DNA of 63,316 nucleotides, counting the filler, from Octopus bimaculoides (Eukaryota), in assembly GCF_001194135.2 (NCBI RefSeq). It is 3 parts of 2 records of this genome, joined end to end, with 100 filler letters (N's around TTAATTAATTAA, not from the genome) between each part and the next. Parts side by side here need not be neighbours in the genome. Positions count along the whole stretch, not along the records: positions 29,197 to 57,540 come from NC_069005.1; 2 more parts are not named here. One strand, 5' to 3'. The first letter of the stretch is position 1; each line of letters begins with the position of its first letter. A model generated the notes under the pieces. The model worked only from the letters and a program-made list of their open reading frames with translations, had not been told where the DNA came from and did no database searches. Position numbers and translations under genes: made by a program. Positions 34,206 through 57,540 of this stretch are shown piece by piece.

Positions 34206-34263
34206 GCCATATATATTATACTATATGCGTGTGTGTGCATAACAAAGATAATAAAGATATGTA

Positions 34264-34315
<52 letters not shown>

Positions 34316-37799: not shown

Positions 37800-38972
37800 G
37801 ACCTTTGAATAAAATTTATTCAATGAAATAATTTCCATTATTATTGATAAATTCCATCAGCATAAAATTTGATTGGTTTCGAAGAAAAAAGTTATCTAGA
37901 TTCATTTCGACATCATTTACATCGTTAAATGTTTTTCTTTCCAATGAGTTCTGTAGAGACAAAAACAATTGGTAGTCGGGTGGTGCAATATCTGGAGAAT
38001 ATGTTGGATTGGTTAAGAGATTCCAGCCAAGTTCATATAACTTTGTTCGATTAACCAAATACACCAGTGGTCGGGCATTGTCTTGTTGGAACACTGAACC
38101 TTTCCTGTTGGCAATCTTCGGCTTCAATTCTTTGTTTTGTTTCAAATTAACCAGCTGACGACAGTACTCATGAGAATTAATGGTCTGGTTTTGTGGGAGA
38201 AGATCATAATGAATAATATATTAATGATCCCACCAAACACAAAGTATAGATTTTTGGCATGGATATTCGTCTTTGGTTGCTGTTTTGGTGGATCATTTCG
38301 CAAACTCCATGATCTTTCCCGCACTAGGTTTTCGTACACATTCCATTTTTCATCTCCCGTCACAAGTTGCTTAAAAAAAGGCATGCTTTTATTCCGTTTC
38401 AAAAGCATATCACAAACGGAATACCGGTCCAAGCAATTCTTTTCTGAGAGTTTGTAAGGGACCCATACATTACAGCGAGAAATGTATCCTAGCTTCACTA
38501 GGTTTTCATGAGCCGTACTTTAGAAACTTCCAACTCCTCTGCAAGTTCTCTCGTAGTAACATTCGAGTTTCCTTCAATTTTTGCCTCCAAAACATCTTCA
38601 TCCAGTTTTGAAGGTCTTCCACTACAACTGTCATCTTCCAAGCTAAACTCTCCAGCTTCAAACAGTTGATTCACCTACAGCATCATCACCATAAACTTCA
38701 CAAACATTTTTGCAATTCTGTGCAGAATGTCCCTCCTTTTTAAAAATGAATAACATTACAACACGAATATGAAATTTTTGTTCATCCACTTTAAATGTTA
38801 ATAAAGGGTAACTGGAATGAAGGATAAATCTATTTTTTGTCAGGAACAAAGAAGAGATGCCCTACCACTTCAAGCGACGCCAAAGTTTTAATTGTATTAC
38901 GTATCAGGTGTAGTCAATGAAGCATGGCAAGATTTAGCGTAAAAACGCTCAGACCTTTCCGGACAACCTAAT
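37800..38972 (-). mobile_element. Mariner transposon (Hsmar1/SETMAR-like), frameshifted, 3' TIR missing
   Basis: WVPYKL, VTGDEKW, FQQDNARP, YSPDIAPPDYQLF. 5' TIR TATTAGGTTGTCCGGAA. Confidence 0.9.
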
Positions 38973-39295
38973 ATATATGTAGCTGCGTGTGTATATTTGT
39001 GTTGCATTTGTGTTTCCTCACCACCACTTACCCCGTCCTATGTAATAAGTACCAGGCTTAAAAAAAGACTGGGGTCAATTTGCTCGACTGAACCGTTCAA
39101 GGTGTTGCCCCAGTAGGATCGTAGTCCAGTGATTGAAACACGTGAAAGGTAAAATATTACGCACATAGACACACACAGAGACCCCCCCCCCCCNNNNNNN
39201 NNNNNNNNNNNNNNNNNNNNNNNNNNNNNNNNNNNNNNNNNNNNNNNNNNNNNNNNNNNNNNNNNNNNNNNNNNNNNNNNNNNNNCACACACACA

Positions 39296-39960
39296 CACAG
39301 CGTGGTCCAAAAGTAACAAGTCCATTTTAAATATAATAACTCATTTACAATTGATTTTTCAATTGTTTTTTGTTTCAGATTATTGACCCGTGCTTTTTAG
39401 AAAACAATCATAGAGAAAGTTACGTCAAAGCAACGAGTAAAAATAATCGAATTTTATCAAGAAAATCAACAATAAATTATGTTAACCTAAAGGGCATACA
39501 TTCGTTATTTTAGGTTCAGACAATCAACATCAAAGCATCTTAGAACAACATTCAACGTCTACGGTTGAGAATAAAAGAAAAGCTTTCACCATCAACCCAA
39601 TGGCGGGTCCCAGTAGCTTGGTGTATTCCGAAGCTCACCACAGGGGAGTCAAAGGATACTGAATTTATTAAGTGCAGCTAGTTCAAGAACTAAAGCTAGC
39701 AGATTATCGGATGCGATTAGTGTATGCTGCCCAGATTGGAGTATTGCTAAAGATTGAGACCAATCAACTTAATTTCCACAGCTTGGTTGAAGGCCACCAA
39801 TATCCGGATGATGCTTGAAATGAATAACTATTTTATGGAGGCAAGCCAACGATTGTGTTCGTGCATTAAAAAGGTCATCGAAGCTGATGGCGTATTTATA
39901 GAATAATCTTATAAGGAAGCTTATTAAGAACATCTGCACAAACTTATCTTTAAATATATA
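39296..39960 (+). mobile_element. Internally deleted Tc1/mariner-like element
   Basis: TIR-like cagcgtggtccaaaagt, N-terminal RVKIIEFYQENQ, C-terminal ..KKVIEADGVFIE*. Confidence 0.55.
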
Positions 39961-40041
39961 GTCTTTCTTTGCTAGATTACAGATTTTTCTTTATTAAATC
40001 TTCAGATAAGTCCTCAGAAATCTTAAACATCCGGCCTATCG

Positions 40042-40079
<38 letters not shown>

Positions 40080-40082
40080 ATC

Positions 40083-40424
40083 TTCCCTAGAAAATAGATA
40101 GCAGCCAATTTTGTCAGTGAATTGAATTTATCGCATTGTGCTTGAATAAATGCAACACTTAACAGATCTTTTCCATTCATCCGATGCAACAGTTTATCTA
40201 CTGACATCAAATGATGGAAAGCAATGCTACGCATACACAGGTTCGTGAACATCCCTGCTTGACTCCTGAATACAATTGATGGATGGGTTTTCCACTCTCT
40301 CCTTTCGAATTGTTCCTCCAAGGAACATGAATTACGCTTATTATCTGTATATTACATCAATTAATATAATCTGACAGCTTGGCCGAGAAGTACCGCCTTT
40401 GAGCGTATAACTGCGTAAGCATGC

Positions 40425-40498
<74 letters not shown>

Positions 40499-40500
40499 GG
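40083..40500. repeat. Unclassified ~400-bp interspersed repeat ending in (CTAT)n; second copy at about 56951-57360
   Basis: Both begin ttccctagaaaatagatagcagccaatttt and end gtataactgcgtaagcatg-(ctat)n. Confidence 0.75.
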
Positions 40501-41223
40501 TATATACATACATATATGCATATATATGTATATATATGCATATATTTGCTTACATATGTATATGCATGTATATAATATATATATATATGTCTGTATATAT
40601 TTAGATGTATGTATATATATATATTTATATATGTCTATATATATATATATANNNNNNNNNNNNNNNNNNNNNNNNNNNNNNNNNNNNNNNNNNNNNNNNN
40701 NNNNNNNNNNNNNNNNNNNNNNNNNNNNNNNNNNNNNNNNNNNNNNNNNNNNNNNNNNNNNNNNNNNNNNNNNNNNNNNNNNNNNNNNNNNNNNNNNNNN
40801 NNNNNNNNNNNNNNNNNNNNNNNNNNNNNNNNNNNNNNNNNNNNNNNNNNNNNNNNNNNNNNNNNNNNNNNNNNNNNNNNNNNNNNNNNNNNNNNNNNNN
40901 NNNNNNNNNNNNNNNNNNNNNNNNNNNNNNNNNNNNNNNNNNNNNNNNNNNNNNNNNNNNNNNNNNNNNNNNNNNNNNNNNNNNNNNNNNNNNNNNNNNN
41001 NNNNNNNNNNNNNNNNNNNNNNNNNNNNNNNNNNNNNNNNNNNNNNNNNNNNNNNNNNNNNNNNNNNNNNNNNNNNNNNNNNNNNNNNNNNNNNNNNNNN
41101 NNNNNNNNNNNNNNNNNNNNNNNNNNNNNNNNNNNNNNNNNNNNNNNNNNNNNNNNNNNNNNNNNNNNNNNNNNNNNNNNNNNNNNNNNNNNNNNNNNNN
41201 NNNNNNNNNNNNNNNNNNNNNNN

Positions 41224-41290
<67 letters not shown>

Positions 41291-41358
41291 CAAGACAAAA
41301 TGAGATAAAATGTGAGTAGTTTTCAGAATATTTATAAGGAAAAATATATAGATATATA

Positions 41359-41407
41359 GTCTTACAGCTGTTTCTGTCGATATTATGGATATCCCTTCAT
41401 CAGAGAC
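41359..41407 (-). ncRNA. Type I hammerhead ribozyme motif, helix II partly decayed, in a Penelope-like repeat (about 41294-41600)
   Basis: Minus strand gtct-CTGATGA-A-gg-gatat-ccata-atatc-gaca-GAAA-cagctg-TA-agac: helix I gtct/agac, palindromic ACAGCTGT, GUA site. Confidence 0.6.
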
Positions 41408-43389
41408 GATATGAGATAGTTAAACAGAGGTGAATAATTGAGTTCGAAATTCGAAATTATTATGGAAGAGGAGGGGATATGGAATATAGAGGGAAATAAG
41501 AAAATGAAAGTAGAAATAAAACAAAATATATAAAGATATTCTTGTTGCAATTCCATTATTCGAGGAAAGTGGTGTATAGATGTGGTAAAAGAGTTTCCTG
41601 TACATGCTATGTAAGTTCCATTAGTGGTTCATGTTTAGTCATTTCAAAGTAAGGAGGCGTGGATACTGTATTGCTTATTGGAAAGGATCCACACACACAC
41701 ACACACGCACGCACATACGCACACACAAATGTATGTATGTGTGTTTGTATGATAGAAATATAGATGCATGTTTTCGCAGGTATATACTCAAAGGCCAAGC
41801 TATTAGACTATAATGTATTAATTTATGTAATACACACTCACATATATGTATATGTATGTATATATATATATATGTACATGAGCATGTATATATATATATA
41901 CGTATATATTTGTGTATATGCATACACATATACATNNNNNNNNNNNNNNNNNNNNNNNNNNNNNNNNNNNNNNNNNNNNNNNNNNNNNNNNNNNNNNNNN
42001 NNNNNNNNNNNNNNNNNNNNNNNNNNNNNNNNNNNNNNNNNNNNNNNNNNNNNNNNNNNNNNNNNNNNNNNNNNNNNNNNNNNNNNNNNNNNNNNNNNNN
42101 NNNNNNNNNNNNNNNNNNNNNNNNNNNNNNNNNNNNNNNNNNNNNNNNNNNNNNNNNNNNNNNNNNNNNNNNNNNNNNNNNNNNNNNNNNNNNNNNNNNN
42201 NNNNNNNNNNNNNNNNNNNNNNNNNNNNNNNNNNNNNNNNNNNNNNNNNNNNNNNNNNNNNNNNNNNNNNNNNNNNNNNNNNNNNNNNNNNNNNNNNNNN
42301 NNNNNNNNNNNNNNNNNNNNNNNNNNNNNNNNNNNNNNNNNNNNNNNNNNNNNNNNNNNNNNNNNNNNNNNNNNNNNNNNNNNNNNNNNNNNNNNNNNNN
42401 NNNNNNNNNNNNNNNNNNNNNNNNNNNNNNNNNNNNNNNNNNNNNNNNNNNNNNNNNNNNNNNNNNNNNNNNNNNNNNNNNNNNNNNNNNNNNNNNNNNN
42501 NNNNNNNNNNNNNNNNNNNNNNNNNNNNNNNNNNNNNNNNNNNNNNNNNNNNNNNNNNNNNNNNNNNNNNNNNNNNNNNNNNNNNNNNNNNNNNNNNNNN
42601 NNNNNNNNNNNNNNNNNNNNNNNNNNNNNNNNNNNNNNNNNNNNNNNNNNNNNNNNNNNNNNNNNNNNNNNNNNNNNNNNNNNNNNNNNNNNNNNNNNNN
42701 NNNNNNNNNNNNNNNNNNNNNNNNNNNNNNNNNNNNNNNNNNNNNNNNNNNNNNNNNCTCTTAGTAGTAAAGACGACGCAAGAGACCTTTTGGCCGAAGG
42801 CACATAGCCCCTTTCGTAATGAAGCTAGAAATAGAGTTTTGGCCAGTCAGTCGTGAAAAAAAAAAAAACAATAACAAGACCACCTGAAACGAAAGACTTG
42901 GAAGCGAAAATTGTTCCAGACAAGAAGATGTTATCTCTTTTCTAATCGGTTCCAGTTGTGTCCTAAAAGATTCAGTTTATATACGATTTCCGTTTACTAA
43001 TCAACGAGCGGGGAACTTTATATCTCTTTCACAACTGGCTGACCAAGACAGTGTTCTTAGCTCCACAAGTAAAGAAGTTATGTACTTCCGACCAGCACTT
43101 CTGATGTGTCGTCTGTATTGATAAGAAATAATAGACACGAATCCAATGGCATCTTTCTGAGCGGTCATAAACAACGATTACATAAAATGTTACTGCTAAA
43201 AAAATGTTTAGAGTGTGCCTTTTTTCCCCACTAATGAACAACTGAGCGATACCCCCCCCCACACACACAGGGAATATATCACGTTATTGTTTCACTTTTA
43301 TATACATGGATATACATTCACACGTCAGTTGAAAAGTGAAAATGTAATAGTAATAATTTAACACTCAATGGTTTTACATTTCTGTATAT

Positions 43390-45110
43390 GACCTATTCAT
43401 GTAAGTGCGTCTTCATATATTGTGTTTTCTGTCTTGTCATATTTATCACTGAGAATGTAGAGGTTCTTTTCAATTCCAACTCTAGAACATCCAACATAAC
43501 AGCTGACCATATGAGAAGCAAGTTTGAAGGAGGTTAAGTACTACCACCTTTTGAGATTGGCCTTGTGCTTCGTTGGTAGACATTGCAAAGCTGTTTGACT
43601 GGAAACTGCAGTCTCTTGAACTGAAAGGGGAGATCATTTGAGATGAAAGGTATCCTTGGAATGAAGACATTCTCACGCATCATGTTGCCATGATGGAGAA
43701 GAGATTTCTCAGCTGCATAGGAGACTTGCACATTTGTGCCTCTGTTAGAGACCTCTGAGATGGCAAGCCTGGCGATATGTTTGACATACTGTGTTATCAA
43801 CCATGCATAAGGCTGTAAATGGTGTGGGTCCCTTGAGATGGTGTAACAGAAGCCTTAGATAGTAGCACTCTGAGTAGTTGAGATGGACAACATAAACTCT
43901 GCCAAGTATGTCTGATTTCTTGATTCCCAGATGATGTGCGGGTGCTCCAAGTGCACGTCTTTTCCATTTGTTTTGGTACCAGGTATAGAATTGTGGAACT
44001 TCATTGTGTAGCAATCTTGTAACTAATTAATCATCTTGACAGAGCTTGAAGAATGTTGTGAGTGTGGTATTTTTGGGAGCTGCCATTTTCAGTTGGACTG
44101 TGTCTGTCAGTGGGCTGTCCCTGAGATGGAGAACAATGTCACACTTGTCATGTTCTTGCCCATCCAGAAGCATACTATTTCTTTTGCTGTTGGTGCATTA
44201 AACCTCCATCCATGTTAACCAGATGGTTTCTTGTATGATCTGATAGCTACCTTGTAATCCATGGAGTCAGGTGGAATTGTTTCAAGTGCAGTCCTGAAGC
44301 TTCCGATCAAGTTGTTGTTGTTGTTATGCAGCAGCTTTTACAGAGTCACTACAATGTTCATCCTGATGCCGGAAATGTTCTTACACCTCTCTTGCCCTTC
44401 TTGTTGAGAATCACCCATAATATATTTGAAGGAATTTTAGTGAATCATTTGACAGAGGTAGTAGAGAGCCAATCCGATTATAAATCTGACCGTGGACCTT
44501 AAAAGTTTGTAAGAATCCTGGCTCAGTTAGATCGCTTGTGGTTCCAAATGATGTCATCTGTAGTGCAGCACTGCACTGTCTAATTTTGTTTTGGAAGTGC
44601 TTGAGATCTTGGTCAGTTGATGACAACAGTTTCTGCAATAGCTTTGGAAGTTGGGGATTGCAGTGAGTTTAACCTTTCCACCATTGCAGCACAGTGCAGG
44701 TGTCTCTCCAGACTACTTCTTTGCTTTACAATGTGTGCACTCAGTTGTCATTGCACCAATGGAAACGCTAGTGTCATCTGCATAATGAACGGCTGGATCA
44801 TAATTGAAAGCTGCTTCATAGAAGCTGCTTCTTCGAGCTGTAACTCCTCTTCGTTCTGCCGAAGAGATCCTATTCCTTGTTAGTCGTGCATATCTCTGTT
44901 GATCACTTTGTGGTGCGCTGACTTTTGTAGTACACAGTCTGTTCGTTTCTTTGTACGCTTCACTTTCTGCCAATATCTCTTTTTTCCTGGACAAAGACAT
45001 TCTTTTGGCTGACCTTGAAATTGTAGACAAATTGGCATAGCTACAGATTTCTACCCCCACTCGACTTTGGATGATCATAACTTTCAGAAAACTGGATATT
45101 TTTTAATGAA
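43390..45110 (-). mobile_element. Internally deleted Helitron Rep/helicase pseudogene
   Basis: N-terminal C-x2-C (ECTHCKAKK), ALQMTSFG..FKVHGQIYNRIGSLLP..KFLQIY, GRVYVVH..ECYYLRLLLHHLKGP..TYRQACHLRGL, PIF1-type VFIPRIPFI..LPFQFKRLQFPV..FAMSTNEAQGQS..FSYGQL. Confidence 0.9.
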
Positions 45111-45851
45111 ATTTTGCTATGAATATGTGTTATATCATGTGGATTCTGAATATACAAAATTTTGCCTTTGTCATATGGAAAGGATCTAGACAGAATATTC
45201 CATTACAAATCGAATTGTTTATTATAATCTTTTAGAGACAAAATTAATTTACTAAACCTAGTATTGTTGCGTTTTTTGATATATCTAAATGTCGAGTAAT
45301 GGTTAGATATTCTTTTCGACAACTGAGATGAAGAACTACCTATGTAAAAAAGACATCAGAACCCTCTTCAGCCGGTTTTTGACCACAATTTCCAGCAGCT
45401 TCATATAACCGTCTGAATTGAGCCTAAAACCCTCTTCTGGCGTGCTGGCGTAGCTAGAACGCATGTTGTGTTGTCCACGTCTTTGTATCTCCATTACAGT
45501 TGTCCGTCACATCTTATAGCCTTTGTAATGTTCACAGAACATTGAACAGCAGTCATGATGTCAGTATTTTGATACCCGGCACGAATGATTATTATAAAGG
45601 AACACTTCTCTAATATTCAAATGGCTTCCAGTCCTCCATATCAGTAAACTTCTTCTCAACACGCTTACCGACGCCGTTGACTGTTCACTACTACATTAAG
45701 TTGTTCATGAAAAACAGAAAACATAAAAATCATCAAATGTACCCCGAACACCCTGTATGTTTGATCAGCGCCACTTTAGGAGCAACCTATAATACAACAA
45801 CAACAACAACAACAACAACATCCTATTCAACATCTTTTCTCCATTTTTCAG

Positions 45852-46009
45852 AAATCACAGACAAATGCCTGCAATACAGTAAGGATTTGGACTGCAGGTT
45901 CTATGATTGTTTACACGGAAGATTTCCCTGTGGTGGACCCAAGAAAAAGAATAGACCTCGTGCTCATTGTGTGAGATCCAAGGAAAAAGCACATAAATTA
46001 ACTGACGTG
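45852..46009 (+). CDS. Stanniocalcin-like protein, internal exon A (ITDKCLQYSKDLDCRFYDCLHGRFPCGGPKKKNRPRAHCVRSKEKAHKLTDV)
   Basis: Acceptor ccatttttcag|, donor GTG|GTAAGT, phase 1/0. Five Cys in a C-x8-C-x4-C-x6-C-x12-C pattern. Confidence 0.82.
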
Positions 46010-46073
46010 GTAAGTCAAACTTCTGATTAGAAACGCGCGTGAGAAATAGTAAGAGACAGAAGAGTGAGGGAGG

Positions 46074-46115
<42 letters not shown>

Positions 46116-46384
46116 GAAGAGACAGTTAAGAGGAAGGAGAATGTCATGTTTTATTATCATTATTATATCGTAAGGTGGCGAGATGGCAGAATCGTTTGCA
46201 CGCCGGTCGAAATGCTTAGCGGTATTTCGTCTGCCACTACATTCTAAATTCAAATTCCGCTGAGGTCGGCATTGCCTTTCATCCTTTCGGGTTGGATTAA
46301 TTAAGTACCAGTTGAGTACTGGGATCGATGTGATCGAATGTCCCCCTCTCTAGAAAATCCAGGCCTTGTGCCTATAGTAGAAAA

Positions 46385-46468
<84 letters not shown>

Positions 46469-47357
46469 CGGAAGACTACGAGCTGGCAGAATTATTAACA
46501 CACTAGGCAAAAAGCTTAGCGGCTTTTCGTCCGTCTTCTGAGTCCAACTTCCACCGAGGTCCACTTTGCCTTTCATCCTCTCGGGTTCATAAAACAAGTG
46601 TCAGACATACAAACACACACACACATATATATATACATACATATACACGACAGGCTTATTTCAGTTTCCGCCTACCAAATCCACTCCCTAGGCTTTGGTC
46701 GGCCCGAGGCTATATAGTAGAAGACACTCGTCCGAGGTGCCCTTCACTATTTTTTAATATTTATACATTATCGTATGTGAAAGTGCATAGCTCAGTGGTT
46801 AGAGCGTCGGGATCACAAGCATGAGGTAGTGAGTTCGATTCCCGGACCGTGCCGTGTTTTGTGTTCTTGTGCAATACTCTATATTTCACGTTGCTCCACT
46901 CCAGTTCATTCAGCTGTAGAAATGAGTTGTGACCTCAGTGGTGCCAAGCTGTATCGGCTTTTCCTTTGCATAACATCGGTGGCGTGGAGAGGGGAGGCCG
47001 GTATGCACAACTGACTGCTGATCTTCCATAAACAGCCCTTCCCAGACTTGTGCTTCGGAGGGCAACTTTCTAAGTGTAATCCCATTATCATTCATGATCA
47101 AAGGGGTTCTTTTAACTCTTCCTTTTTTTCTACGCCACATCCTTACCTTGTTATTCTATTCCTTACTCCGCCAGATTAGAAAGACCAAGTACTGGGATCT
47201 TTGTTATCTACTTGGCCTCCATTCCTCTCAAAATTGCTTGTCTTGTGTTATAACTAGACAGAATTAGTATTCACTCACCCCAAATAAATAAATAAATAAA
47301 CAATCCCTTGAAAAGCGTCAATTTTTGTTTTTACTAACCACTGTCTAATATTTACAG

Positions 47358-47584
47358 GGTAAAATCTGGATTAATAGTATCATAAAATGTTTCATGAAAG
47401 AGGTGACACTTATCTACAAACGTCCGTCACTCGATTGTAATGATGTCGACACATTGATCCTGGGCACACAACACAAATGTTACACAGCCAATGATTTCTG
47501 TAATGTTGGCTGGGAACACCGCAGGGAACTGTGGAAAATATTCAGTGTACCCATGAGTACGTCTAAATCACATTACTATAAAAT
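47358..47584 (+). CDS. Stanniocalcin-like protein, internal exon B (GKIWINSIIKCFMKEVTLIYKRPSLDCNDVDTLILGTQHKCYTANDFCNVGWEHRRELWKIFSVPMSTSKSHYYK)
   Basis: Acceptor tttacag|GGT in phase with exon A, donor AT|GTAAGT. Cys spacing x23-C-x15-C-x13-C-x6-C equals that of human STC1 C74-C98-C114-C128-C135. Confidence 0.85.
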
Positions 47585-48599
47585 GTAAGTATTTGTTCTT
47601 TCTGTTGTTGTTGCTGTTGGTGGTAGTGGTAGTGGTGGTGGTGGTGGTGGTGGTTGTGGTGGTAGTCATGATGATGGTTGCATTGATCGAGTGAGGGACA
47701 TCTTGGTGCTGTGGAGGGACTTTTAATTATTGGTGGAGACTCAGTTAAACTTTGATCGAACATTCAGATGGTCGGGCGTTGTTCTGGATATCAGGATATA
47801 ACATATGTGTGGTCGTGTAGGAAGTAGCTTGCTTCCAAATCACATGGTTCCGGGTTCAGTCCTACTGCGTGGCACCTTGGATAAATGTCTTCTACTACAA
47901 CCTCGTGCCGACCAAATCCATGAGTGGATTTGGTAGACAAAATCTGAACGAAGCCCGTCGTTTATATGTGTGCATGTGTGTGTGTGCGTGTGTGTGTATC
48001 TGTGTGTGTTTCTGTGTCTGTGTTCCCCCAGCCCACACACAACGCACGACAACCGGTGTTGGTGTGTATACGTCCCCATAAATTAGCGGTTCGGCAAAAT
48101 AGGTAGGCATAAAAAATAAGTATTGGTATCGATACGCTCGACTAAAATTCTTCAAGGTGGTGCTACAGTATGGCCGCAGCCTACATGAATGAAACAAATA
48201 AAAGGTAAAAGATATCTGTGTCTAGCTGAATAACATACATTTGCTACCCATTCTTTCGCGACGTGATGAATCATTGAGGGACATTTTTTGCTGTTACATG
48301 AAAAATTCCCTGCTAACCGCCCAAAGCACCACCTTTGAGTATTACGATAACAACGGCATAATAATTCTATATCCACCAAGCAAGCAAGCAACCAATTAAC
48401 TAAGATAAAACTATGTAACCAGTTAAAGCATATTTGTAGTGGAGGAACTATTTTGTCTCTGCAATATTTTCTCAGTTTTTTTCTTCAGTCCTGGTGCATA
48501 GCCGAAGGAATATTTTCTCTATTTTTCTATGCTAATTGAGCTTTATTAAAGTAATTTTTTTTTGCTGCTTTGCATGACCATCCTGTCTTATTTAGGGTC

Positions 48600-48935
48600 A
48601 ACATTAATCTTGCTTTCGTTTTAGGTCGAGGCAGTCTACGTCACTGTTGATGTGGAAAATTTTTGTACTAGTCATTATCTTTCGGGTTTTCACATCAATG
48701 GTTCTGATCTCATAAAACATTCAACCAAGTAGCCGAAATGCTGGAATGCATACTAACTTGGTATTGCAAATACATTGTGGTTCATTATTTTAATGTATGC
48801 AGAGAGTTCTGAGGTTCATATTTTTCTTGTCCGTCTGTTACATGTTATAGTTACGCGTTTCCTGTTACACTACTATCGTTAGATATGTTTTCATATACCC
48901 CAAGGTACCTGTAACATTCTTCATCAGATATAGGA
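48600..48935 (-). mobile_element. Decayed RT (thumb region) fragment of an R4-like RLE retrotransposon
   Basis: Minus-strand frames give CYRYLGVYE, SELSA..HNVFAIP and IDVKTRKIMT..IFHINSDVDCL. Confidence 0.7.
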
Positions 48936-49081
48936 GACTCATTATTTACAATATTTATACTTGACGGATATTTATCTTCATCTTGGGCATATGGCATAGT
49001 GGTTAAGAGCGCGGGCTATCAATTCCAAGATCCCGAGTTCGATTCCAAGCAGTGACCTGAATAATAATAATAATAATAATA

Positions 49082-49326
49082 AGGTAACTCGAGGTAACTC
49101 GAATGTGGAATCTAAAAACGGAAACAATTCCTATCATAGTAGGTGCCTTAGGTATAATAAAAAAATATTCAGACAAATACATAACAAAAACACCAGGACT
49201 TACAAATATATATAACATACAGAAAATTGCACTACTGGGCACTGCACACATCCTACGCAAAACACTTCCAATACAGTAACCATAAGAGCATCACAGCAAA
49301 CCACAGCACATACCCAAGGCACACAG
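49082..49326 (+). mobile_element. R4/Dong-like 3' fragment inserted in the (AAT)n of the tRNA-headed element
   Basis: EVTRMWNLKTETIPIIVGALGIIKKYSDKYITKTPGLTNIYNIQKIALLGTAHILRKTLPIQ*. Same subfamily as 16754-17223. Confidence 0.85.
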
Positions 49327-49536
49327 NNNNNNNNNNNNNNNNNNNNNNNNNNNNNNNNNNNNNNNNNNNNNNNNNNNNNNNNNNNNNNNNNNNNNNNNNN
49401 NNNNNNNNNNNNNNNNNNNNNNNNNNNNNNNNNNNNNNNNNNNNNNNNNNNNCAGTACAGTTCTATATTTAAGAGATGAGGAATTATTTACATTATTTAC
49501 ATTTGACGGATATTTGTCCTCATCTTGTTTGCTGTT

Positions 49537-49582
49537 AACACAACGTTTCGGCTGATATACCCTCCAGCCTTCGTCAGGTGTC
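49537..49582 (-). ncRNA. Intact-looking minimal type I hammerhead ribozyme
   Basis: Minus strand GACAC-CTGACGA-A-GGCTG-gagggtatat-CAGCC-GAAAC-GTT-GTGTT. All core residues present; helix I 5 bp, helix II 5 bp, palindromic helix III (AACGTT). Predicted cleavage after GUU, between 49542 and 49541. Confidence 0.8.
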
Positions 49583-51593
49583 TTGGGGAAATTTCGAACC
49601 TGGGTTCTCATTCCTAAAGATGTTACTATTATTATATTATTATTATTATTCCTATTATTAATCAGGTCGCTGCCGTGAATCGAACTCGGAATCTTGGGGT
49701 TAGTAGCCCGCGCTCTTAACCACTACGCCCACGGGCATATGGCGTAGTGGTTAAGAGCGCGGGCTACTAACCCCAAGAAATAAACACCAGATAAGTTGTG
49801 AGCCACACAGAAATTGTAGGATTTGCTTAGAGATATGGGAATACTTTTCGTATATTCAGTGAGTATCTGAGTCTCACAAGTATCTCGCTTCTTAATCTGT
49901 ACGCTCTGCCGGAGTTGGGCAGTGGGGACTGATTTATCTTTTGATTGTTGAAGGTGTCCATCATTAATCTCTTATTAGCCACAACAATATTGAGCAGATT
50001 TCAGCTGCCATGTCTACCTTCTTGGTGATTTTATTTCTTTGGATTCCAAACCAATTTCCTGCAGCTTGCTAGAAAATCGCGGCAACCAACAATAACATGT
50101 CACGAGGCCACGTGTAATCCCCTTACAAGAGCCTCATCAAATCAGTCCTGAAATGTGGCTTCTTTCTTCTGAAAGGAAAATGGGTCAACCATTCAAATCC
50201 ACATGATTCTCGTAGTCTGAGATTTGTTTCCTACAGTTGCTTTCGCTTTTCGTGCTTCTGGAATTGGTATTTTCCCATCACTTGCAGAGTTGAATTTGCC
50301 TCCTGATTCAAACTGAGTTAGCACTAGACAATAGANNNNNNNNNNNNNNNNNNNNNNNNNNNNNNNNNNNNNNNNNNNNNNNNNNNNNNNNNNNNNNNNN
50401 NNNNNNNNNNNNNNNNNNNNNNNNNNNNNNNNNNNNNNNNNNNNNNNNNNNNNNNNNNNNNNNNNNNNNNNNNNNNNNNNNNNNNNNNNNNNNNNNNNNN
50501 NNNNNNNNNNNNNNNNNNNNNNNNNNNNNNNNNNNNNNNNNNNNNNNNNNNNNNNNNNNNNNNNNNNNNNNNNNNNNNNNNNNNNNNNNNNNNNNNNNNN
50601 NNNNNNNNNNNNNNNNNNNNNNNNNNNNNNNNNNNNNNNNNNNNNNNNNNNNNNNNNNNNNNNNNNNNNNNNNNNNNNNNNNNNNNNNNNNNNNNNNNNN
50701 NNNNNNNNNNNNNNNNNNNNNNNNNNNNNNNNNNNNNNNNNNNNNNNNNNNNNNNNNNNNNNNNNNNNNNNNNNNNNNNNNNNNNNNNNNNNNNNNNNNN
50801 NNNNNNNNNNNNNNNNNNNNNNNNNNNNNNNNNNNNNNNNNNNNNNNNNNNNNNNNNNNNNNNNNNNNNNNNNNNNNNNNNNNNNNNNNNNNNNNNNNNN
50901 NNNNNNNNNNNNNNNNNNNNNNNNNNNNNNNNNNNNNNNNNNNNNNNNNNNNNNNNNNNNNNNNNNNNNNNNNNNNNNNNNNNNNNNNNNNNNNNNNNNN
51001 NNNNNNNNNNNNNNNNNNNNNNNNNNNNNNNNNNNNNNNNNNNNNNNNNNTATACACATATATATTCATACATACACACACACACACATACACATACACA
51101 CACACATACACATACACACACACACACATATATATATGCATGTATGTATGTATTCATGTATATTGATTTATTCAAGCAGGGAGAAACATGCACATAAGGA
51201 AAGTAATTTAACTATCTGTAAAAAAAAAAAAGGAAAAATTAACCAATTAATAATTATGAGAAATAAAGTTTGATGCCACTTCTGCTAGATTACTGCTGTT
51301 TTTATTGTTATTGTTTGCGTTTCCTTGTTTAACCCCAGGGCAGCCTCGAAACGGTGCAGCTGTGTTAACTGATGTTCCAACCGTAACCACCACGAAATGT
51401 TTTGTTTTTAAATAGATTTTCTTAAAGTTAACACATGTTACTTGATTTGGAAATTCATCCATCTTTATTTCGAAATGTTTATTTGAATAACATAAAGAGA
51501 GGACAATCACTAAAATCAACAAAAAAACTATGAGCATAATTGTTATAGTAACAATAAAATAACAACAAAAACAAGATCTACATGCTACTACAA

Positions 51594-51975
51594 GTTGTTG
51601 GCACTCCGTCGTTTACGACGTCGAGGGTTCCAGTTGGTCCTTCAACGGAACAGCTTGCTCGTGAAATTAACGTGCAAGTGGCTGAGCACTCCACAGACAC
51701 ATGTACCCTTAACGTAGTTCTCGGGGATATTCAGCGTGACACAGTGTGACAAGGCTGACCCTTTGAATTACAGGTACAACAGAAACAGGAAGTAAGAGTG
51801 CGAGAAAGTTGTGGTAAAAGAGTACAGCAGGGTTCGCTACCATCCCCTGCCGGAGCCTCGTGGAGCTTTAGGTGTTTTCGCTCAATAAACACTCACAACG
51901 CCCTGTCTGGGAATCGAAACCGCTATCCTATGGCCGTGAGTCCGCTGCTCTAACCACTGAGCCATTGCGCCTCCA
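51594..51975 (-). mobile_element. tRNA-derived SINE family 3; other copies at about 8343-8600(+), 17645-17948(-), 18555-18765(-), 46780-47110(+), 53000-53285(+), 56546-56872(+)
   Basis: Head ggcgc(a/g)tggctcagtggttagagc..gttcgattccc, middle gtgttcttgagcaagacac, tail aattaacgtgcaagtggctgagcactccacagac. Confidence 0.8.
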
Positions 51976-53689
51976 CACTACTACAAGTATGAAAATAACA
52001 ACAGTAATAATCCTTTCTACTATAGGCACAAGGCGTGGATTTTGTGAGGAGGGGCACATTGGTTCACACCGACCACAGTACTCAACTGGTACTTAATTTA
52101 TCGACAGCGACAGGATGAAAGGCAAAGTCAACCTCGATGGGATTTGAACTCGGCAGACGAAATGCCGCTAAGCATTTCGCCCGGTGTGCTAACAATTCTG
52201 CCAGCTCAACAACAATAGTAGTAATGATAACATCAATAAAAATAAGAAATTCAACAACTAAGGAAACAGTATGCTGTTTCTTGATATGATAAAAATAAGA
52301 GATAAATCTCACTCAAATTTCATCATTGTGTTTTATGTTGGAATAACTATTATATTTGATCTCTTGACATTTACTTGTTTCAGTCATTAGACTGCGGCCA
52401 TACTGGGGTACTGCCTTGAAGAATTTTAGTCGACCATATCGATTACAGTACTTATTTTTAAAGCTTCGTACCTCTTCCATTGGCCTATTTTGCCGAACCG
52501 CTAAGTTACGGGCGCTTAGACACAACTACACCAGATTTCAAGTGGTAGTGGGAGGCAAACAGGGACACCACACACCCACAAACCCACACATCGAAATTCT
52601 TTCAATTTTCGTCTACCAAATCCCCTCACAAGGTTTTGGTTTATTGGGTTTTCAAAGCATAACACTAATAATATAACATATTTAAGTTCTGTGTATGTTT
52701 ATAGAAAAAAAATATTATTTTGTTTTGGAATGTTGCCTCTCAAAGCAGATGCCCTATCAAAAATAGTATCTAAATATTGGGTTACCTCCATCATTCACTC
52801 ACTGTCCCATTACTGTCTCTCACATAATACCTTGTCTCTGCTTTCTCTCATTCCTTACTCCTTTTAGCACTGTCTTTCCCATCTTTCTTTCGTGGATCCG
52901 AGGCTATAGAAGACACTTGCCTAAGGTACCACGCCGATGGGCTTAACGCAGAACCATGTGGTTAGGAAGGAAACTTCTTGCCACGCAGCTATATACTGTG
53001 AAGGCGCGTGGTCTGTGTGATTAGAGTATTGCACTCACAATTGCGAGATCGTGGTTTCGATTCCCAGAGCAGTTGTACGTTGTGTTCTTAAGTAAAACAC
53101 TCCGTTTCACGTTGTTCCTCTCAACTGTAAATGAATAACCCTGCGATGGACTGGCGTTCCGTTCAAGGGAAATGTTGGCCGGCCTATTAAGCCAGTGAGG
53201 TAACATCTTTCAAAAGCTAGAGCAATGCGAAGCGATTTGTGACCAGCGGTGTACAATAACATCCGATAATCTGGTCGATACCTCGATACCGTGATATATA
53301 AACATATATAAAATCAGGACTATAGCAATCATTAAACTTGTAAGCTATGTCTCCTTTGGTGAAGAAACTTCTCATTTGACCATGGACAAGTATAACCAAT
53401 CATTCGCCCTTTGCTATTAAATTTTTTTAATATAAATCTTATCCATCAGAACCAATACACATATCTTTTAGAAGAATATGATCTGGTTCAACCCACCGTT
53501 TAACAAAATCGTTAAAACGTTTGTCACCGAAGCAATTCTTGTATTTAATTCACAGTCATTCTACAAACACCCCGAGCAGTTATTACACAACTTTTGCAAC
53601 AGGAATTTTAATTTTGATAAATAACTACAAGACCCATCATCTTAAAAGGAATTGTGATTTTCTTTAATATTATTAAATGAAGACGGAAA

Positions 53690-53850
53690 GAGAAAGAGAG
53701 AGAGAGAGAGGGGGGAGAAAGATAAAGAGAGAGAGAGAGAAAAGAAGAGAGAGAGAGAAAAGAAGAGAGAGAGAGAAAAGAAGAGAGAGAAAAGAAGAGA
53801 GAGAGAGAGAAAAGAAGAGAGAGAGAGAGAAATAGAGAGAGAGTGGTGGG
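53690..53850. repeat. Compound (GA)n/(GAAAA)n purine tract
   Basis: Direct reading of the sequence. Confidence 0.9.
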
Positions 53851-56160
53851 GGAGTGAGAAATCTCATTCTACTGAAGATGAAATGAGGCTCTGTTCATTT
53901 CATATATATCCAAATTAAGAAAATGTTGTCAATCACGGCCCATCACAAACAAACAATCACGAAGCTTATGTTTCTTATTAATAATATTTATAAAAAGAGA
54001 TTTTGTAGCATTCTCTCATAACAGTTTATAACAAATTCATCGAAACAGAAGATGCCGTAACAAAACCTCAACTGTCACGTTCCTCATTGATAATGTTTAA
54101 GTTTTCTGTTGTTTTTAAAATCAATAATAATTATTTTGATGTTCATATGGAACTATTTGTATTTACATGTCATCATTTAAAAATGGTGGAGTCTTAAAAA
54201 ATAACTTCAAACTGCATCCGGCAGTGGAACGCTTGTGCTTGAGCTTCAGGATTAAAGAGTGTAGAACAACCTCTTGGTTACTATTGTTTCCTGGTCTATT
54301 CTATCACGGAATACTAGACCCTGTCAGGATCCCAGCTATGGGTTAATTAGCATGTCTTGCCTTACCTTCCTTTTAAGCCTTGCCTTACCTTCCTTCGTTC
54401 CTTCGTCAAATACAGAACAGCGTCTGTTTCAACATTAGACAACAAATTGTGTTTTGTGATGCTATTCGCTCTAACAGAACAAAATCAAGCCTGTGGGCTG
54501 TAAAAGTACCCCACTACCATAGACGTGGCAGTTCGCTGCAGGTTGACAACGACCTCAGTCGTCGAGGATCTCCTCCTTGGCATATATATACATAATCCAA
54601 AGTATAGTAACTGAAAAATTCGTACTAGTGAAACTGTACAGAAGCAGACGAGTACGAGTAATTAGCCCTAATATAATAATACACACACGGAACTTACAAA
54701 TATTTATTTTGCATTGCTTTTGGCTATATTTACAGCGTATGTCAAAATATTTCTTCCTTATTTCTAAAGTGCACTGTAATTAAAAACAAACTTACGAAAA
54801 ACAAGAACCACTTCTCTTAACTATAAGGAAAGTCAGGAGGTATGAGATGAATATATTTATCTCACCAATTGATATGCATAAGATGATAGTCATCTCGCAG
54901 CCAGCATCATGCAAAAATAATTGTTGCGTAGCTCGGGTCAGCATTGCCAAAACGTGGGTCCAAGACGTTTTGAATTTGTGAGAGCATAACCCTTTCCAGT
55001 TCTAAACATCAGTGTAATAAAAAAGATGAAAGGCTAAGTTGAACCCGGTGGAATTTGAACTGAGAACGTAAAGAGATGTGAAATACTGCTAGGTATTATT
55101 TCAGGCGTGCTGACGATTCTGTCAGGTCACGGGATTAAGGTACATTTATAATAAAATGTGATTTAAGCGTTAAATAACTATATAATTTGAGCACTGATTG
55201 AAGAATAATAATTTTATTTTACTTAAATTTAATCATTAGAAGCATCTCTGCTAAGGACATACACTGGTGTCGGAAATAGCCAATAGGCTAATTAAATTAT
55301 TATTAGCGATAGAAGCAGTATAAATACCAAGAAGAAATATTCATCCTTATTTAAAAGTGGATGTTGTGTTAAAACACAAAGTACTGCAATAGTTACCATG
55401 AGAGAACTCTCATATTGGTTTTTAGTGCGTAAAAGCTCTCTTCTTTATATCGTGAGCGGGGAGATAACTCACTTACCATCGCCACCATCGAAACTACCAG
55501 GTAACGGGATTTCGGACTTCCCTCAATTTGTTAATGGTAGAAGCTCCACTGCTGGAGTCAGCAGCGATATCTCTGCTAGTGATACGCATAGAACCATAGT
55601 GCGTAAACAGGCACTATACTTACACATACACACATATACACACACAGACATACACACACATTCATTCACAAACACACATATTTAATGCACAATATACGTA
55701 TTTATATAATCCGGTGATAATCACAGAAAAATCTCCTTTAGTGGACCAGACCAAAAACTACGTAGTAAATCAATACGTACAAGTGTAATGTAGAGTCTTA
55801 AGCAGTTGCAATGCCGTCAGTCTAATCAGAGAGGATTATTTCATAAAGAGTATATTAACTATAAGGAAAGTCAGGAGGTATGAGATGAATATATTTATCT
55901 CACCAATTGATATCCATAGGATGATAGTCATCCCGCAGCCAGCATCATGCAAAAATAATTTATTTAGTGTATAATATATTACTTTACGTGCCTGAATTAG
56001 TATGGACGCTTTAAAAGAACTATTGTACACTTTATAAACAAACCAATGCAGATATAGAAGGCTAGCTCATCAGATCAACAAAATGTCATGGTTAATCAAT
56101 TTTTCAACTCCTGCTTATATATATATATATATATTAATATATATATATATATATATATAG

Positions 56161-56423
56161 TTCACAATGCGCATGTTGCTCAGATAAAAGCACACTGCTG
56201 CAGCTATGAAATCCTTCCTCATCCCATTTACTCTCCCGACCTCTCACCGTCGGACTTCTACCACTTTCCAATCACTAAGTCTTTTTTGAAGGGGAAGCAT
56301 TTTTCGGATGATGAACTTATTTTCGATGTAAAGTCTTAGTTCCAGACGCAACCCACCGACTTCTACAGACGACGATTTCACAGCTGCATAAAGCGATGGG
56401 AGAAGTGTGTCACCATTGGTGGT
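56161..56423 (+). mobile_element. Mariner 3' fragment, same family as 32960-34205
   Basis: HNAHVAQIKAHCCSYEILPHPIYSPDLSPSDF..LKGKHFSDDE..IKRWEKCV. About 3 differences in 111 bp from 33781-33891. Confidence 0.85.
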
Positions 56424-57307
56424 NNNNNNNNNNNNNNNNNNNNNNNNNNNNNNNNNNNNNNNNNNNNNNNNNNNNNNNNNNNNNNNNNNNNNNNNNNNNN
56501 NNNNNNNNNNNNNNNNNNNNNNNNNNNNNNNNNNNNNNNNNNNNNNTTCGATTCCCAGACCGTGCATTGTGAGTGTTTATTGAGCAAAAACATCTAAAGC
56601 TCCACGAGGCTCCGGCAGGGGATGGTGGTGAACCCTGCTGTACTCTTTCACCACAACTTTCTCTCACTCTTACTTCCTGTTTCTGTTGTACTTGTATTTC
56701 AAAGGGCCAACCTTGTCACAGTCTGTTTCACGCTGAATCTCCCCCGAGAACTACGTTAAGGGTACACGTGTCTGTGGAGTGCTCAGCCACTTGCACGTTA
56801 ATTTCACGAGCAGACTGTTCCGTTGATCAGATCAACTGGAACCCTCGACGTCTTAACCGACGGAGTGCCAACTGATGTGTCTGTATAACAAAGATAATAA
56901 AGATATGTAATCTATGTATCTATCTATCTATCTATCTATCTAAGAACCACTTCCCTAGAAAATAGATAGCAGCCAATTTTGTTAGTGATATTTTGAATTG
57001 AATTTATAGCATTGTGCTTAAATAAATGCAGCATATTTTTTCCATACATCAGATGTAACAGTTTAACTAATGACATGAAATGATGGAAAACAATGCTATG
57101 AATACACAGGTTCGTGAATATCCCTGCGTGAATCCTATATAATATTGATGACAGTTGATGGATGAGTCTTCCTCTCTCTCCTTTCGCGTTTTTCCTCAAT
57201 GAAACATGAGTTACGTTTATTATCTGTATATTACATCAATTAATATATTATAGTCTGACAGCTTGGCCGATAAGTACCGCCTTTGAGGGTATAACTGCGT
57301 AAGCATG

Positions 57308-57406
<99 letters not shown>

Positions 57407-57475
57407 GTCTGTCTGTTTGTCTGCCTGCCTTCCTACCTTCCTGCCTGTCTGTCTGCCTGCCTGCATGCCTGCCTG

Positions 57476-57540
<65 letters not shown>

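What the first reader, a model, noticed from the sequence alone, without database searches (positions are those of the whole stretch)
45852..47584. Unannotated invertebrate stanniocalcin-like gene hidden between repeats
Seen: two canonical in-phase exons give C-x8-C-x4-C-x6-C-x12-C-x23-C-x15-C-x13-C-x6-C. Established: human STC1 has C-x8-C-x4-C-x5-C-x8-C-x23-C-x15-C-x13-C-x6-C-x34-C, and GKAFV..SLKC and RYY correspond to GKIWI..IIKC and HYY here. STC homologues are known outside vertebrates but are little studied in molluscs. A basic insert (GPKKKNRPRAH) sits where STC1 has DTDGMYDI. The signal-peptide exon (phase 1 donor) and the exon with the tenth Cys (phase 2 acceptor) were not found and may lie in N gaps.
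Basis: partly seen in the sequence, partly recalled or inferred. Interest (0 to 1): 0.7.

Follow-up and report, generated by a model that had tools for sequence, protein, structure and literature searches.

The report
Octopus stanniocalcin-like gene, already annotated

Summary

The stanniocalcin reading also holds:
- Pfam PF03298 scores 32.2 bits against a cut-off of 23.
- A profile of the family hits human STC2 in the PDB at E 1.7e-16.
- The only credible Foldseek matches are STC2 chains.

"Unannotated" is wrong. The peptide is 100% identical to Octopus bimaculoides LOC106876188 ("uncharacterized protein"). Both RefSeq models are defective: one is truncated and the other is fused to the next paralog.

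The signal-peptide exon projects into N gap 40652-41223. The tenth-cysteine exon projects into N gap 50336-51050.

The gene sits in an Octopus-specific tandem array, and the next copy starts just past the piece's end. Its exons diverge faster than the flanking introns (about 20% against 12.5%; dN/dS 0.8-1.4), yet they have no indels and every cysteine is kept. A February 2026 preprint reports stanniocalcin-mimicking toxins in the O. bimaculoides venom gland. Whether this copy is one of them could not be checked.

The finding is known in kind and of modest interest.

The parts
40036..40651 (+). Conserved block immediately upstream of coding exon 1 (promoter-proximal region) of the gene
   Evidence: Collinear with O. 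sinensis L002 9220-9824 and O. vulgaris L001 8996-9645, which lie 180-350 bp before the signal-peptide exon at 10001. The block is duplicated at 56911-57380 with 82% identity.
40652..41223 (+). N gap predicted to hold coding exon 1 (start codon, signal peptide, about 106 nt, phase-1 donor)
   Evidence: Synteny: the block before the gap matches L002 up to 9824, and the next collinear block (window 42780 onwards) matches L002 10916 onwards. L002 exon 1 lies at 10001-10106. tblastn finds no signal-peptide exon anywhere in the assembled sequence. The gap edges are TA/CA microsatellites.
45289..45298 (+). 'MSSN' start used by both RefSeq models; probably not a real first exon
   Evidence: ATGTCGAGTAATG followed by the weak donor GTTAGA. 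It encodes no signal peptide. It lies in a segment (45161-45363) that matches L002 only in inverted orientation, so it is a repeat and not syntenic.
45852..46009 (+). Coding exon 2 (158 nt; Cys1-Cys5; enters in phase 1)
   Evidence: It is 100% identical to XP_014780114.1 residues 5-57. Orthologous or paralogous exons of the same length are in L001, L002 and L004; in L003 the exon is 3 nt longer.
46010..47357 (+). Intron 2 (1348 nt), filled with (AG)n, (TAT)28 and SINE-like repeats
   Evidence: GTAAGT...CAG borders.
47358..47584 (+). Coding exon 3 (227 nt; Cys6-Cys9, GKIWIN and NDFCNVGW motifs; leaves in phase 2)
   Evidence: The donor AT|GTAAGT carries an in-frame TAA if it is not spliced, which is why some database models of paralogs end at ...YYKM.
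50336..51050 (+). N gap predicted to hold coding exon 4 (about 130 nt; tenth cysteine; stop codon)
   Evidence: Window 50087-50333 matches L002 28396-28663 and L001 58030-58296. Window 51087/51128 onwards matches L001 59006 and L002 29983 onwards. Exon 4 lies between these blocks in both species (L002 about 28902-29031; L001 about 58442-58571). The L001 interval (710 bp) equals the gap length (715 N). No exon-4-like sequence is found elsewhere in the piece.
55398..55499 (+). ORF used as 'exon 1' of the downstream paralog in UniProt A0A0L8GL32; a repeat copy, probably not coding
   Evidence: It is 100% identical to residues 1-34 of P0002. Copies with an in-frame stop occur on both strands in O. 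vulgaris (L001 6227-6331 on the minus strand, 63406-63510 on the plus strand), and a diverged copy is in L002.
56910..57422 (+). Upstream-of-exon-1 block of the next tandem paralog (LOC106876189), whose exons lie beyond the piece's end
   Evidence: It matches the pre-exon-1 blocks L001 9002-9507 and L002 9231-9669 and window 40047-40496. This gives a repeat unit of about 16.9 kb.

Best explanation
These are coding exons 2 and 3 of a four-exon gene, Octopus bimaculoides LOC106876188 (my confidence in this identity is about 0.97). The gene belongs to the stanniocalcin family (PF03298). The complete product is inferred to be a secreted, non-glycosylated, basic (pI about 9), all-helical protein of roughly 150-170 residues. 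It would be held by five disulfides formed from ten cysteines, and it lacks the eleventh cysteine that dimerises vertebrate STC. Nine of the ten cysteines are encoded here. The signal peptide and the tenth cysteine lie on exons hidden in two assembly gaps. The gene is one unit of an Octopus-specific tandem array (about 17 kb per unit here; at least five copies per species, clustered on one chromosome). The coding sequence of this array changes faster than its own introns, while every cysteine and a few motifs stay fixed. My preferred reading of function is an inference, at about 0.5. I think this branch is not the animal's conserved housekeeping stanniocalcin. I think it is a diversifying set of secreted proteins made for export, most plausibly in the posterior salivary (venom) gland. 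There, a stable stanniocalcin scaffold would act on prey as a mimic of their own stanniocalcin. The known partners of stanniocalcin are pappalysin proteases of the IGF axis and calcium uptake in fish gills. If it binds a pappalysin it would do so non-covalently, because it has no equivalent of STC2 Cys120.
For: Identity: 100% match to XP_014780114.1 and to the first 132 residues of XP_052832787.1.

Family: Pfam 32.2 bits against a cut-off of 23. 25 of 27 relatives hit PF03298. The family profile hits STC2 chains 8a7d/8a7e/7y5q at E 1.7e-16 over 145-150 residues, including the tenth cysteine. AlphaFold models (pLDDT 71 and 66) have STC2 as their only Foldseek hits with probability above 0.1.

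Four-exon structure, with a signal peptide (MWKLFSIILLQWALTSQG...) and a tenth-cysteine exon, in four related loci. The downstream O. bimaculoides paralog also has the exon-4 peptide. Synteny places both missing exons in gaps.

Tandem array. The octopus copies form their own clade, apart from the ordinary lophotrochozoan type.

Fast evolution: exons against flanking introns differ by 19.7% vs 12.5% (Fisher p 2e-4) and by 22.1% vs 12.9% (p 2e-5). There are no gaps in 385 exon columns, against 119 and 56 gap columns in the introns. Pairwise dN/dS is 0.80-1.37, although about half the residues are invariant.

Venom link: the preprint 10.64898/2026.02.02.703354 reports 'stanniocalcin doppelganger toxins' (superfamily SF5) among highly expressed secreted proteins of O. 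bimaculoides and Hapalochlaena maculosa posterior salivary glands.

No Cys120 equivalent: arginine aligns with it. No N-x-S/T sequon, and pI 9.2.
Against: No expression data could be consulted, and the preprint's sequence file is not held. O. bimaculoides has at least five such genes, so this copy may not be one of the gland-expressed ones. Its own signal-peptide exon and tenth-cysteine exon are not in the assembled sequence, so intactness of the whole gene is inferred from neighbours and not seen. dN/dS near 1 can also arise from relaxed constraint. The structural matches are specific but weak (E 0.05-0.6, TM about 0.4-0.5) and rest on shallow seven-sequence alignments. No target of any invertebrate stanniocalcin is known, and PMC11925022 considers an interaction with invertebrate pappalysin unlikely.
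Confidence: 0.5

Rival explanations
1. It is an endogenous octopus stanniocalcin: a secreted hormone or paracrine factor acting on the animal's own tissues (calcium or phosphate handling, or inhibition of its own pappalysin). The paralogs would be specialised by tissue or life stage.
For: Family membership is solid. Stanniocalcins are endogenous factors wherever they have been studied (PMC5654410). Nothing here shows where this copy is expressed.
Against: It sits in a lineage-specific tandem expansion, separate from the conserved lophotrochozoan type that the argonaut, chiton, oyster and mussel proteins represent. Its exons evolve faster than its introns and dN/dS is about 1, which is unusual for a hormone with a fixed receptor. 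The hydrophobic Cys4-Cys5 segment shared by non-vertebrate stanniocalcins is replaced by a variable charged loop. The array was not seen outside the genus Octopus in the searches run.
Confidence: 0.38
2. It is a decaying duplicate (pseudogene or gene fragment) left by tandem duplication. It would be kept in annotation only because two exons still read open.
For: dN/dS against its nearest relatives is 0.80-0.90. Exons 1 and 4 are not visible in this assembly. Both RefSeq models are abnormal: one is truncated and one is fused.
Against: There is no stop, frameshift or indel in 385 nt, whereas the adjacent introns carry 119 gap columns. All nine cysteines and the GKIWIN and NDFCNVGW motifs are intact. 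Both acceptors and both donors are canonical. The exons evolve faster than the introns rather than at the same rate. The missing exons fall exactly where synteny predicts gaps bounded by microsatellites, which points to an assembly problem and not to a deletion.
Confidence: 0.08
3. It is a chance pair of open frames with a fortuitous cysteine pattern and not a gene.
For: None beyond the short length of the two frames.
Against: The Pfam E-value is 9e-8. The peptide is identical to an annotated protein. Exon lengths, phases, splice sites and cysteines are conserved in three species.
Confidence: 0.01

Closest known systems
Vertebrate stanniocalcins STC1 and STC2 (Pfam PF03298; STC2 structures 8a7d, 8a7e, 7y5q, 8hgh in complex with PAPP-A)
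   Same: The order of the cysteines matches and so does their spacing, nearly exactly: x8, x4, x23, x15, x13 and x6 are identical to STC2 in the alignments. Both have a G-K-x-[FW]-[IV] motif before Cys6. Both have an all-helical fold. Both are secreted, judging from the signal peptide in the octopus paralogs. Both genes have four coding exons (PMC8806499 for human; for octopus).
   Different: Sequence identity to STC2 is only about 20%. The Cys4-Cys5 stretch is 12 residues, against 8 in STC2. The Cys9-Cys10 stretch is 39 residues in the octopus paralogs, against 34. There is no N-glycosylation sequon, no eleventh (dimerising) cysteine in the full-length paralogs and no STC2-type Cys120. The C-terminal tail is short. 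The family is multi-copy and fast-evolving, whereas the vertebrate genes are two conserved copies. Intron positions were not compared residue by residue.
Ordinary lophotrochozoan stanniocalcin homologues (for example oyster K1PDI7 'Stanniocalcin-2', Mytilus 'Stanniocalcin-like protein', chiton, Owenia, Argonauta hians GAB1608148.1; Roch & Sherwood 2011)
   Same: Both have ten cysteines, a C-x-F-Y-x-C-[FL]-E-x-R-F-P-C-G core, a long Cys4-Cys5 stretch, a signal peptide and a length of 160-250 aa. Both hit PF03298.
   Different: The window protein is 20-31% identical to them. It has lost the hydrophobic G-[YF]-x-x-x-x-G-x-x-Y segment before Cys5, which is replaced by a variable basic loop. It belongs to a separate clade that contains only Octopus species.
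Cephalopod venom superfamily SF5, 'stanniocalcin doppelganger toxins' (bioRxiv 10.64898/2026.02.02.703354)
   Same: Same species (O. bimaculoides) and same protein family. Both are secreted cysteine-rich proteins. The tandem expansion and accelerated exon evolution found here are what one expects of a venom gene family.
   Different: The preprint reports no functional test of these proteins in the passages read.
Neighbouring paralogs LOC106876189 and LOC106876190 (O. bimaculoides) and LOC118767948, LOC118767949 and LOC118767950 (O. sinensis / O. vulgaris)
   Same: They are 45-71% identical, with the same exon lengths and phases. They lie in the same chromosomal cluster.
   Different: Each copy has its own Cys4-Cys5 loop and its own surface residues. 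The window copy is closest to its own downstream neighbour (71%), which suggests recent duplication or gene conversion within O. bimaculoides.

Membership tests
Stanniocalcin family (Pfam PF03298) | Match to the family HMM above the curated gathering score | tested here: met
   32.2 bits against a cut-off of 23, E 9e-8, covering residues 4-125 and profile positions 38-154 of 200. 25 of 27 relatives also match.
Stanniocalcin family (Pfam PF03298) | Conserved cysteines 1-9 in the canonical order and spacing | tested here: met
   All nine align with the STC2 cysteines. They are invariant across 27 relatives.
Stanniocalcin family (Pfam PF03298) | Tenth conserved cysteine (needed for the fifth disulfide) | tested here: inconclusive
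   It is not in the assembled sequence of this gene. The exon that carries it in O. vulgaris, O. sinensis and the neighbouring O. bimaculoides paralog projects into N gap 50336-51050.
Stanniocalcin family (Pfam PF03298) | N-terminal signal peptide (secreted protein) | tested here: inconclusive
   It is absent from the assembled sequence. It is present on exon 1 of the related loci, and that exon projects into N gap 40652-41223. No signal-peptide predictor was available, so the call rests on the hydrophobic MWKLFSIILLQWALTSQG sequence.
Stanniocalcin family (Pfam PF03298) | Helical stanniocalcin fold as in solved STC2 | tested here: met
   Foldseek against the PDB returns STC2 as the top four hits for both models (probability 0.85-1.00, TM 0.37-0.49, E 0.05-0.6). 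All other hits have probability below 0.1. Model confidence is only moderate (pLDDT 71 and 66).
Stanniocalcin family (Pfam PF03298) | Four-exon gene with intron positions shared with STC1 and STC2 | not tested
   Four coding exons are seen in all related octopus loci, and the human genes have four exons (PMC8806499). The human intron positions were not available for comparison.
Vertebrate-type STC1/STC2 subfamily | Conserved N-glycosylation site and an eleventh cysteine for homodimerisation | tested here: not met
   There is no N-x-S/T sequon in the window peptide or in the full-length paralog P0004, and P0004 has exactly ten cysteines. These features are not required of invertebrate members.
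Vertebrate-type STC1/STC2 subfamily | STC2 Cys120, which bonds covalently to PAPP-A | tested here: not met
   Arginine aligns with that cysteine (alignment). This agrees with PMC11925022, which says invertebrate homologues lack it.
Cephalopod venom superfamily SF5 (stanniocalcin doppelganger toxins) | High expression in the posterior or anterior salivary gland, with a secreted product | not testable with these tools
   No expression data or saliva proteome is accessible. The preprint's File S1 is not held.
Cephalopod venom superfamily SF5 (stanniocalcin doppelganger toxins) | Sequence clustering with the published SF5 members | not testable with these tools
Cephalopod venom superfamily SF5 (stanniocalcin doppelganger toxins) | Gene-family expansion with accelerated coding evolution (typical of venom genes, not specific to them) | tested here: met
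   The tandem array is shown. Exons diverge 1.6-1.7 times faster than introns, and dN/dS is 0.8-1.37.

The most novel reading that the evidence does not exclude
The array to which this gene belongs may be a venom-recruited stanniocalcin scaffold under diversifying selection. A hormone fold that is otherwise slow-evolving and single-copy would then have been amplified in Octopus. Its hydrophobic Cys4-Cys5 segment would have been swapped for a hypervariable charged loop, and the product would be exported in saliva to disturb the prey's stanniocalcin targets (the pappalysin/IGF axis or calcium uptake). If so, the variable loop and helix faces would mark the long-sought receptor or target interface of stanniocalcins.
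Probability: 0.35. Interest if true: 0.6.

Novelty: already known. Interest (0 to 1): 0.3.

Why it matters
As a discovery claim it matters little. The gene is already in RefSeq and carries the Pfam domain in public databases, and stanniocalcin-like proteins from this species' venom gland have been reported in a preprint.

Three things are useful:
- The public models of LOC106876188 are wrong. One is truncated and one is fused with LOC106876189. The reason is two assembly gaps that swallow exons 1 and 4, and this is easy to fix with long reads or cDNA.
- The exons of this cluster evolve faster than their introns on a fixed ten-cysteine frame. That is a clean signature of diversifying selection and fits a role in prey or partner interaction rather than a housekeeping hormone.
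- No receptor for stanniocalcin is established outside the pappalysins, so a naturally hypervariable set of stanniocalcin folds could help map functional surfaces.

Tried and rejected
- tblastn of the paralogs' signal-peptide and exon-4 peptides against the piece, at very permissive settings, found nothing credible. The missing exons are therefore not merely overlooked in assembled sequence.
- A pattern search for the one-residue last exon implied by the old RefSeq model (...KMY) found no site in 47585-57540.
- An exact-product look-up of the old RefSeq protein on contigs returned nothing on record.
- A homologue search with the argonaut 'ordinary' stanniocalcin, meant to find an O. bimaculoides orthologue of the conserved type, returned only the query. 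Whether this octopus also keeps a conventional stanniocalcin therefore stays open.
- The preprint's supplements are not held.
- A literature search for the accessions of this cluster gave no paper.
- Rfam and ARAGORN on the whole piece gave no RNA gene.
- A Pfam scan of the larger minus-strand ORFs at 35.3-38.5 kb and 44.7-45.1 kb gave only sub-threshold hits.
- I considered whether the in-frame TAA at the exon-3 donor marks a genuine short isoform. I rejected it as evidence, because any phase-2 intron with the consensus donor GTAAGT has that TAA, and a nine-cysteine product would leave one cysteine unpaired.
- I considered reading the Cys4-Cys5 stretch as an insertion. I rejected that because non-vertebrate homologues all have 12-13 residues there.
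Full report
WHAT IS THERE. The + strand of 45852-46009 and 47358-47584 carries two open segments. Each is preceded by a polypyrimidine tract and AG, and each is followed by GTAAGT. Read from the third base of the first segment they join in frame into 127 residues, ITDKCLQY...SKSHYYK. The intron between them (1348 nt) and the flanks are packed with microsatellites and multi-copy SINE-like elements. The piece has nine N gaps.

WHOSE GENE IT IS. The peptide is 100% identical to XP_014780114.1, 'uncharacterized protein LOC106876188' of Octopus bimaculoides, which already carries a precomputed PF03298 hit. So the window is O. bimaculoides DNA and the gene is annotated, though unnamed.

That 134-aa model starts with MSSN, encoded at 45289-45298 before a weak GTTAGA donor. 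This start lies inside a segment that matches the O. sinensis locus only in inverted orientation, so it is a repeat. It has no signal peptide.

The current RefSeq model for the same locus, XP_052832787.1 (333 aa), runs from these two exons straight into exons 2-4 of the next paralog, LOC106876189, through a bridging exon that is not in this piece. Both models therefore look like by-products of the gaps.

FAMILY. Several independent tests place the protein in the stanniocalcin family:
- Pfam Stanniocalcin scores 32.2 bits against a curated cut-off of 23 (E 9e-8).
- The single sequence finds human STC2 chains in the PDB only weakly (E 0.04). Even so, every cysteine is aligned and GKIWINSIIKC sits on GKSFIKDALKC.
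- An exhaustive profile search found 183 representatives at E<=1e-3.
- A 27-sequence alignment of the closest of these keeps all nine cysteines and one tyrosine invariant. 25 of the 27 hit PF03298.
- The profile of that alignment hits STC2 at E 1.7e-16 over about 150 residues, including the tenth cysteine.
- AlphaFold models of the window peptide (pLDDT 71) and of a full-length paralog (pLDDT 66) are all-helical. In Foldseek against the PDB, the four STC2 entries are the only hits with probability above 0.1 (0.85-1.00; TM 0.37-0.49; E 0.05-0.6).

The structural evidence is specific but modest. The sequence evidence is decisive.

THE MISSING EXONS. I fetched four related loci: L001 and L004 from O. 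vulgaris, and L002 and L003 from O. sinensis. All four show four coding exons:
- Exon 1 (106 nt) encodes MWKLFSIILLQWALTSQG... and ends in phase 1.
- Exon 2 is 158 or 161 nt.
- Exon 3 is 227 nt and ends in phase 2.
- Exon 4 lies 3-7 kb further on. It encodes ...LWNNIAKISSEC...KKLH with the tenth cysteine.

In O. sinensis LOC118767949 the annotated protein stops at ...YYKM, because an unspliced GTAAGT donor reads as TAA. An intact in-frame exon 4 nevertheless lies 6 kb downstream.

The window is collinear with L002 from 37843 to 53067 at 84-88% identity. The last block before gap 40652-41223 ends 177 bp before L002's exon 1, and the next collinear block resumes 810 bp after it. The last block before gap 50336-51050 ends about 240 bp before L002's exon 4 and 146 bp before L001's. 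The block after the gap resumes beyond the exon. The L001 interval (710 bp) matches the gap size (715 N). Both gaps are edged by TA/CA microsatellites, a plausible cause of the assembly breaks. No trace of either exon is found elsewhere in the piece.

GENOMIC CONTEXT. The block upstream of exon 1 (40047-40496) recurs at 56911-57380 with 82% identity. There it precedes the next paralog, whose exons lie beyond the piece's end. The ORF at 55398-55499, which UniProt A0A0L8GL32 uses as that paralog's first exon, is a repeat with stop-containing copies on both strands in O. vulgaris.

O. bimaculoides has at least LOC106876188, LOC106876189, LOC106876190, LOC128250809 and LOC128250800. O. sinensis / O. 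vulgaris have LOC118767942, LOC118767948, LOC118767949, LOC118767950, LOC115224535 and others, within about 0.3 Mb of one chromosome. In a neighbour-joining tree the Octopus copies form one clade. This clade is separate from the ordinary lophotrochozoan stanniocalcins of argonaut, chiton, oyster, mussel, whelk and annelid.

Those ordinary forms share a hydrophobic G-[YF]-x-x-x-x-G-x-x-Y segment before Cys5, which Roch & Sherwood (PMC5654410) pointed out. In the window protein the stretch has the same length but reads GGPKKKNRPRAH, and it differs in every paralog. It is a substituted loop and not an insertion.

RATE OF CHANGE. Against the collinear O. sinensis locus, the two exons differ at 19.7% of sites while 2686 aligned intron sites differ at 12.5% (Fisher p 2e-4). 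Against the O. vulgaris locus the figures are 22.1% and 12.9% (p 2e-5). The exons have no gap columns, and the introns have 119 and 56. Nei-Gojobori dN/dS among the four closest copies is 0.80-1.37, although about half of the residues, including every cysteine and the GKIWIN and NDFCNVGW motifs, never change. A pseudogene would drift at the intron rate and collect indels, and a conserved hormone would be slower than its introns. The observed pattern fits a fixed scaffold with positively selected surface positions. I could not run formal site models.

FUNCTION. The sequence and the family support the following:
- It is a secreted, disulfide-locked helical protein, basic (pI 9.2), without a glycosylation sequon.
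- It probably does not dimerise through a disulfide, because full-length paralogs have exactly ten cysteines.
- It has no STC2-type Cys120 for covalent capture of PAPP-A.

The rest is inferred. A February 2026 preprint lists 'doppelganger toxins mimicking stanniocalcin (SF5)' among highly expressed secreted proteins of O. bimaculoides and H. maculosa posterior salivary glands. Together with the tandem expansion and the accelerated exons, that makes a venom or salivary role the most likely one for this branch (about 0.5). An endogenous signalling role is the main rival (about 0.4), and decay is a minor one. I could not check whether this copy is among the published sequences.

VERDICT. The stanniocalcin interpretation is supported, and 'unannotated' is refuted. 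The placement of the missing exons in gaps is supported by synteny. The finding is already known in kind. The added value is a corrected gene structure and the evidence for diversifying evolution.

Noticed in passing
window 45289-47584 and beyond the piece's end; proteins P0001, P0186, P0187: The current RefSeq protein for LOC106876188 (XP_052832787.1, 333 aa) is a chimera of this gene's exons 2-3 and the next paralog's exons 2-4. The older model (134 aa) is a truncation with an implausible MSSN start.
   Followed up: yes
window 55398-55499 (+); L001 6227-6331 (-) and 63406-63510 (+); L002 8237-8332 (-): The 'first exon' MRELSYWFLVRKSS... of UniProt A0A0L8GL32 is a dispersed repeat. Its copies in O. 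vulgaris carry an in-frame stop and lie on both strands, so that N-terminus is probably spurious.
   Followed up: partly
L002 about 28902-29031; L004 30868-30954: O. sinensis LOC118767949 has an intact, in-frame fourth exon with the tenth cysteine that its annotated protein omits (the model stops at the TAA inside the exon-3 donor). The O. vulgaris model P0005 uses a different, cysteine-less last exon, although an exon-4-like sequence lies 3.4 kb after exon 3.
   Followed up: partly
proteins P0010, P0011, P0012 (Branchiostoma floridae and B. lanceolatum): Amphioxus proteins of 466-699 aa, named lysozyme g or phospholipase A2-like by their sources, contain stanniocalcin-like domains (two matched stretches each). 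They score higher against the octopus profile (118-127 bits) than any non-octopod mollusc (76 bits or less). They could be fused gene models or real multidomain proteins.
   Followed up: no
window 46786-46860 (+), inside intron 2: A tRNA-like segment with A-box and B-box motifs (TAGCTCAGTGG ... GTTCGATTCCCGG) starts a multi-copy element (46822-47110 matches L001 21156-21435). ARAGORN and Rfam do not call it, so it is probably a tRNA-derived SINE.
   Followed up: partly
window 37816-38498 (-) and 33785-33890 (+): Broken ORFs with mariner-type transposase motifs (...YSPDIAPPDYQLF..., ...YSPDLSPSDFYHF...). The Pfam Transposase_1 hit is only sub-threshold (E 0.0066).
   Followed up: partly
window 35299-37029 (-): Three consecutive minus-strand ORFs (204, 151 and 167 aa; the 167-aa frame at 35299-35802 is mostly N-gap X) have no family match apart from a weak zf-AD hit. 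They are probably the remains of a mobile element's gene.
   Followed up: partly
window 40600-40651, 41224-41300, 51051-51130: The N gaps that swallow exons 1 and 4 are bordered by long TA/CA dinucleotide repeats. The same repeats flank these exons in O. sinensis and O. vulgaris, which probably explains the recurrent assembly breaks and the mis-modelled genes across this cluster.
   Followed up: partly
window 32440-32599 (gap) with 33253-34348: The sequence after this gap resembles intron 1 of a downstream paralog in O. vulgaris (L001 66624-67541, 88-92% identity). This could be another repeat family, or a hint of a further first exon hidden in that gap.
   Followed up: no
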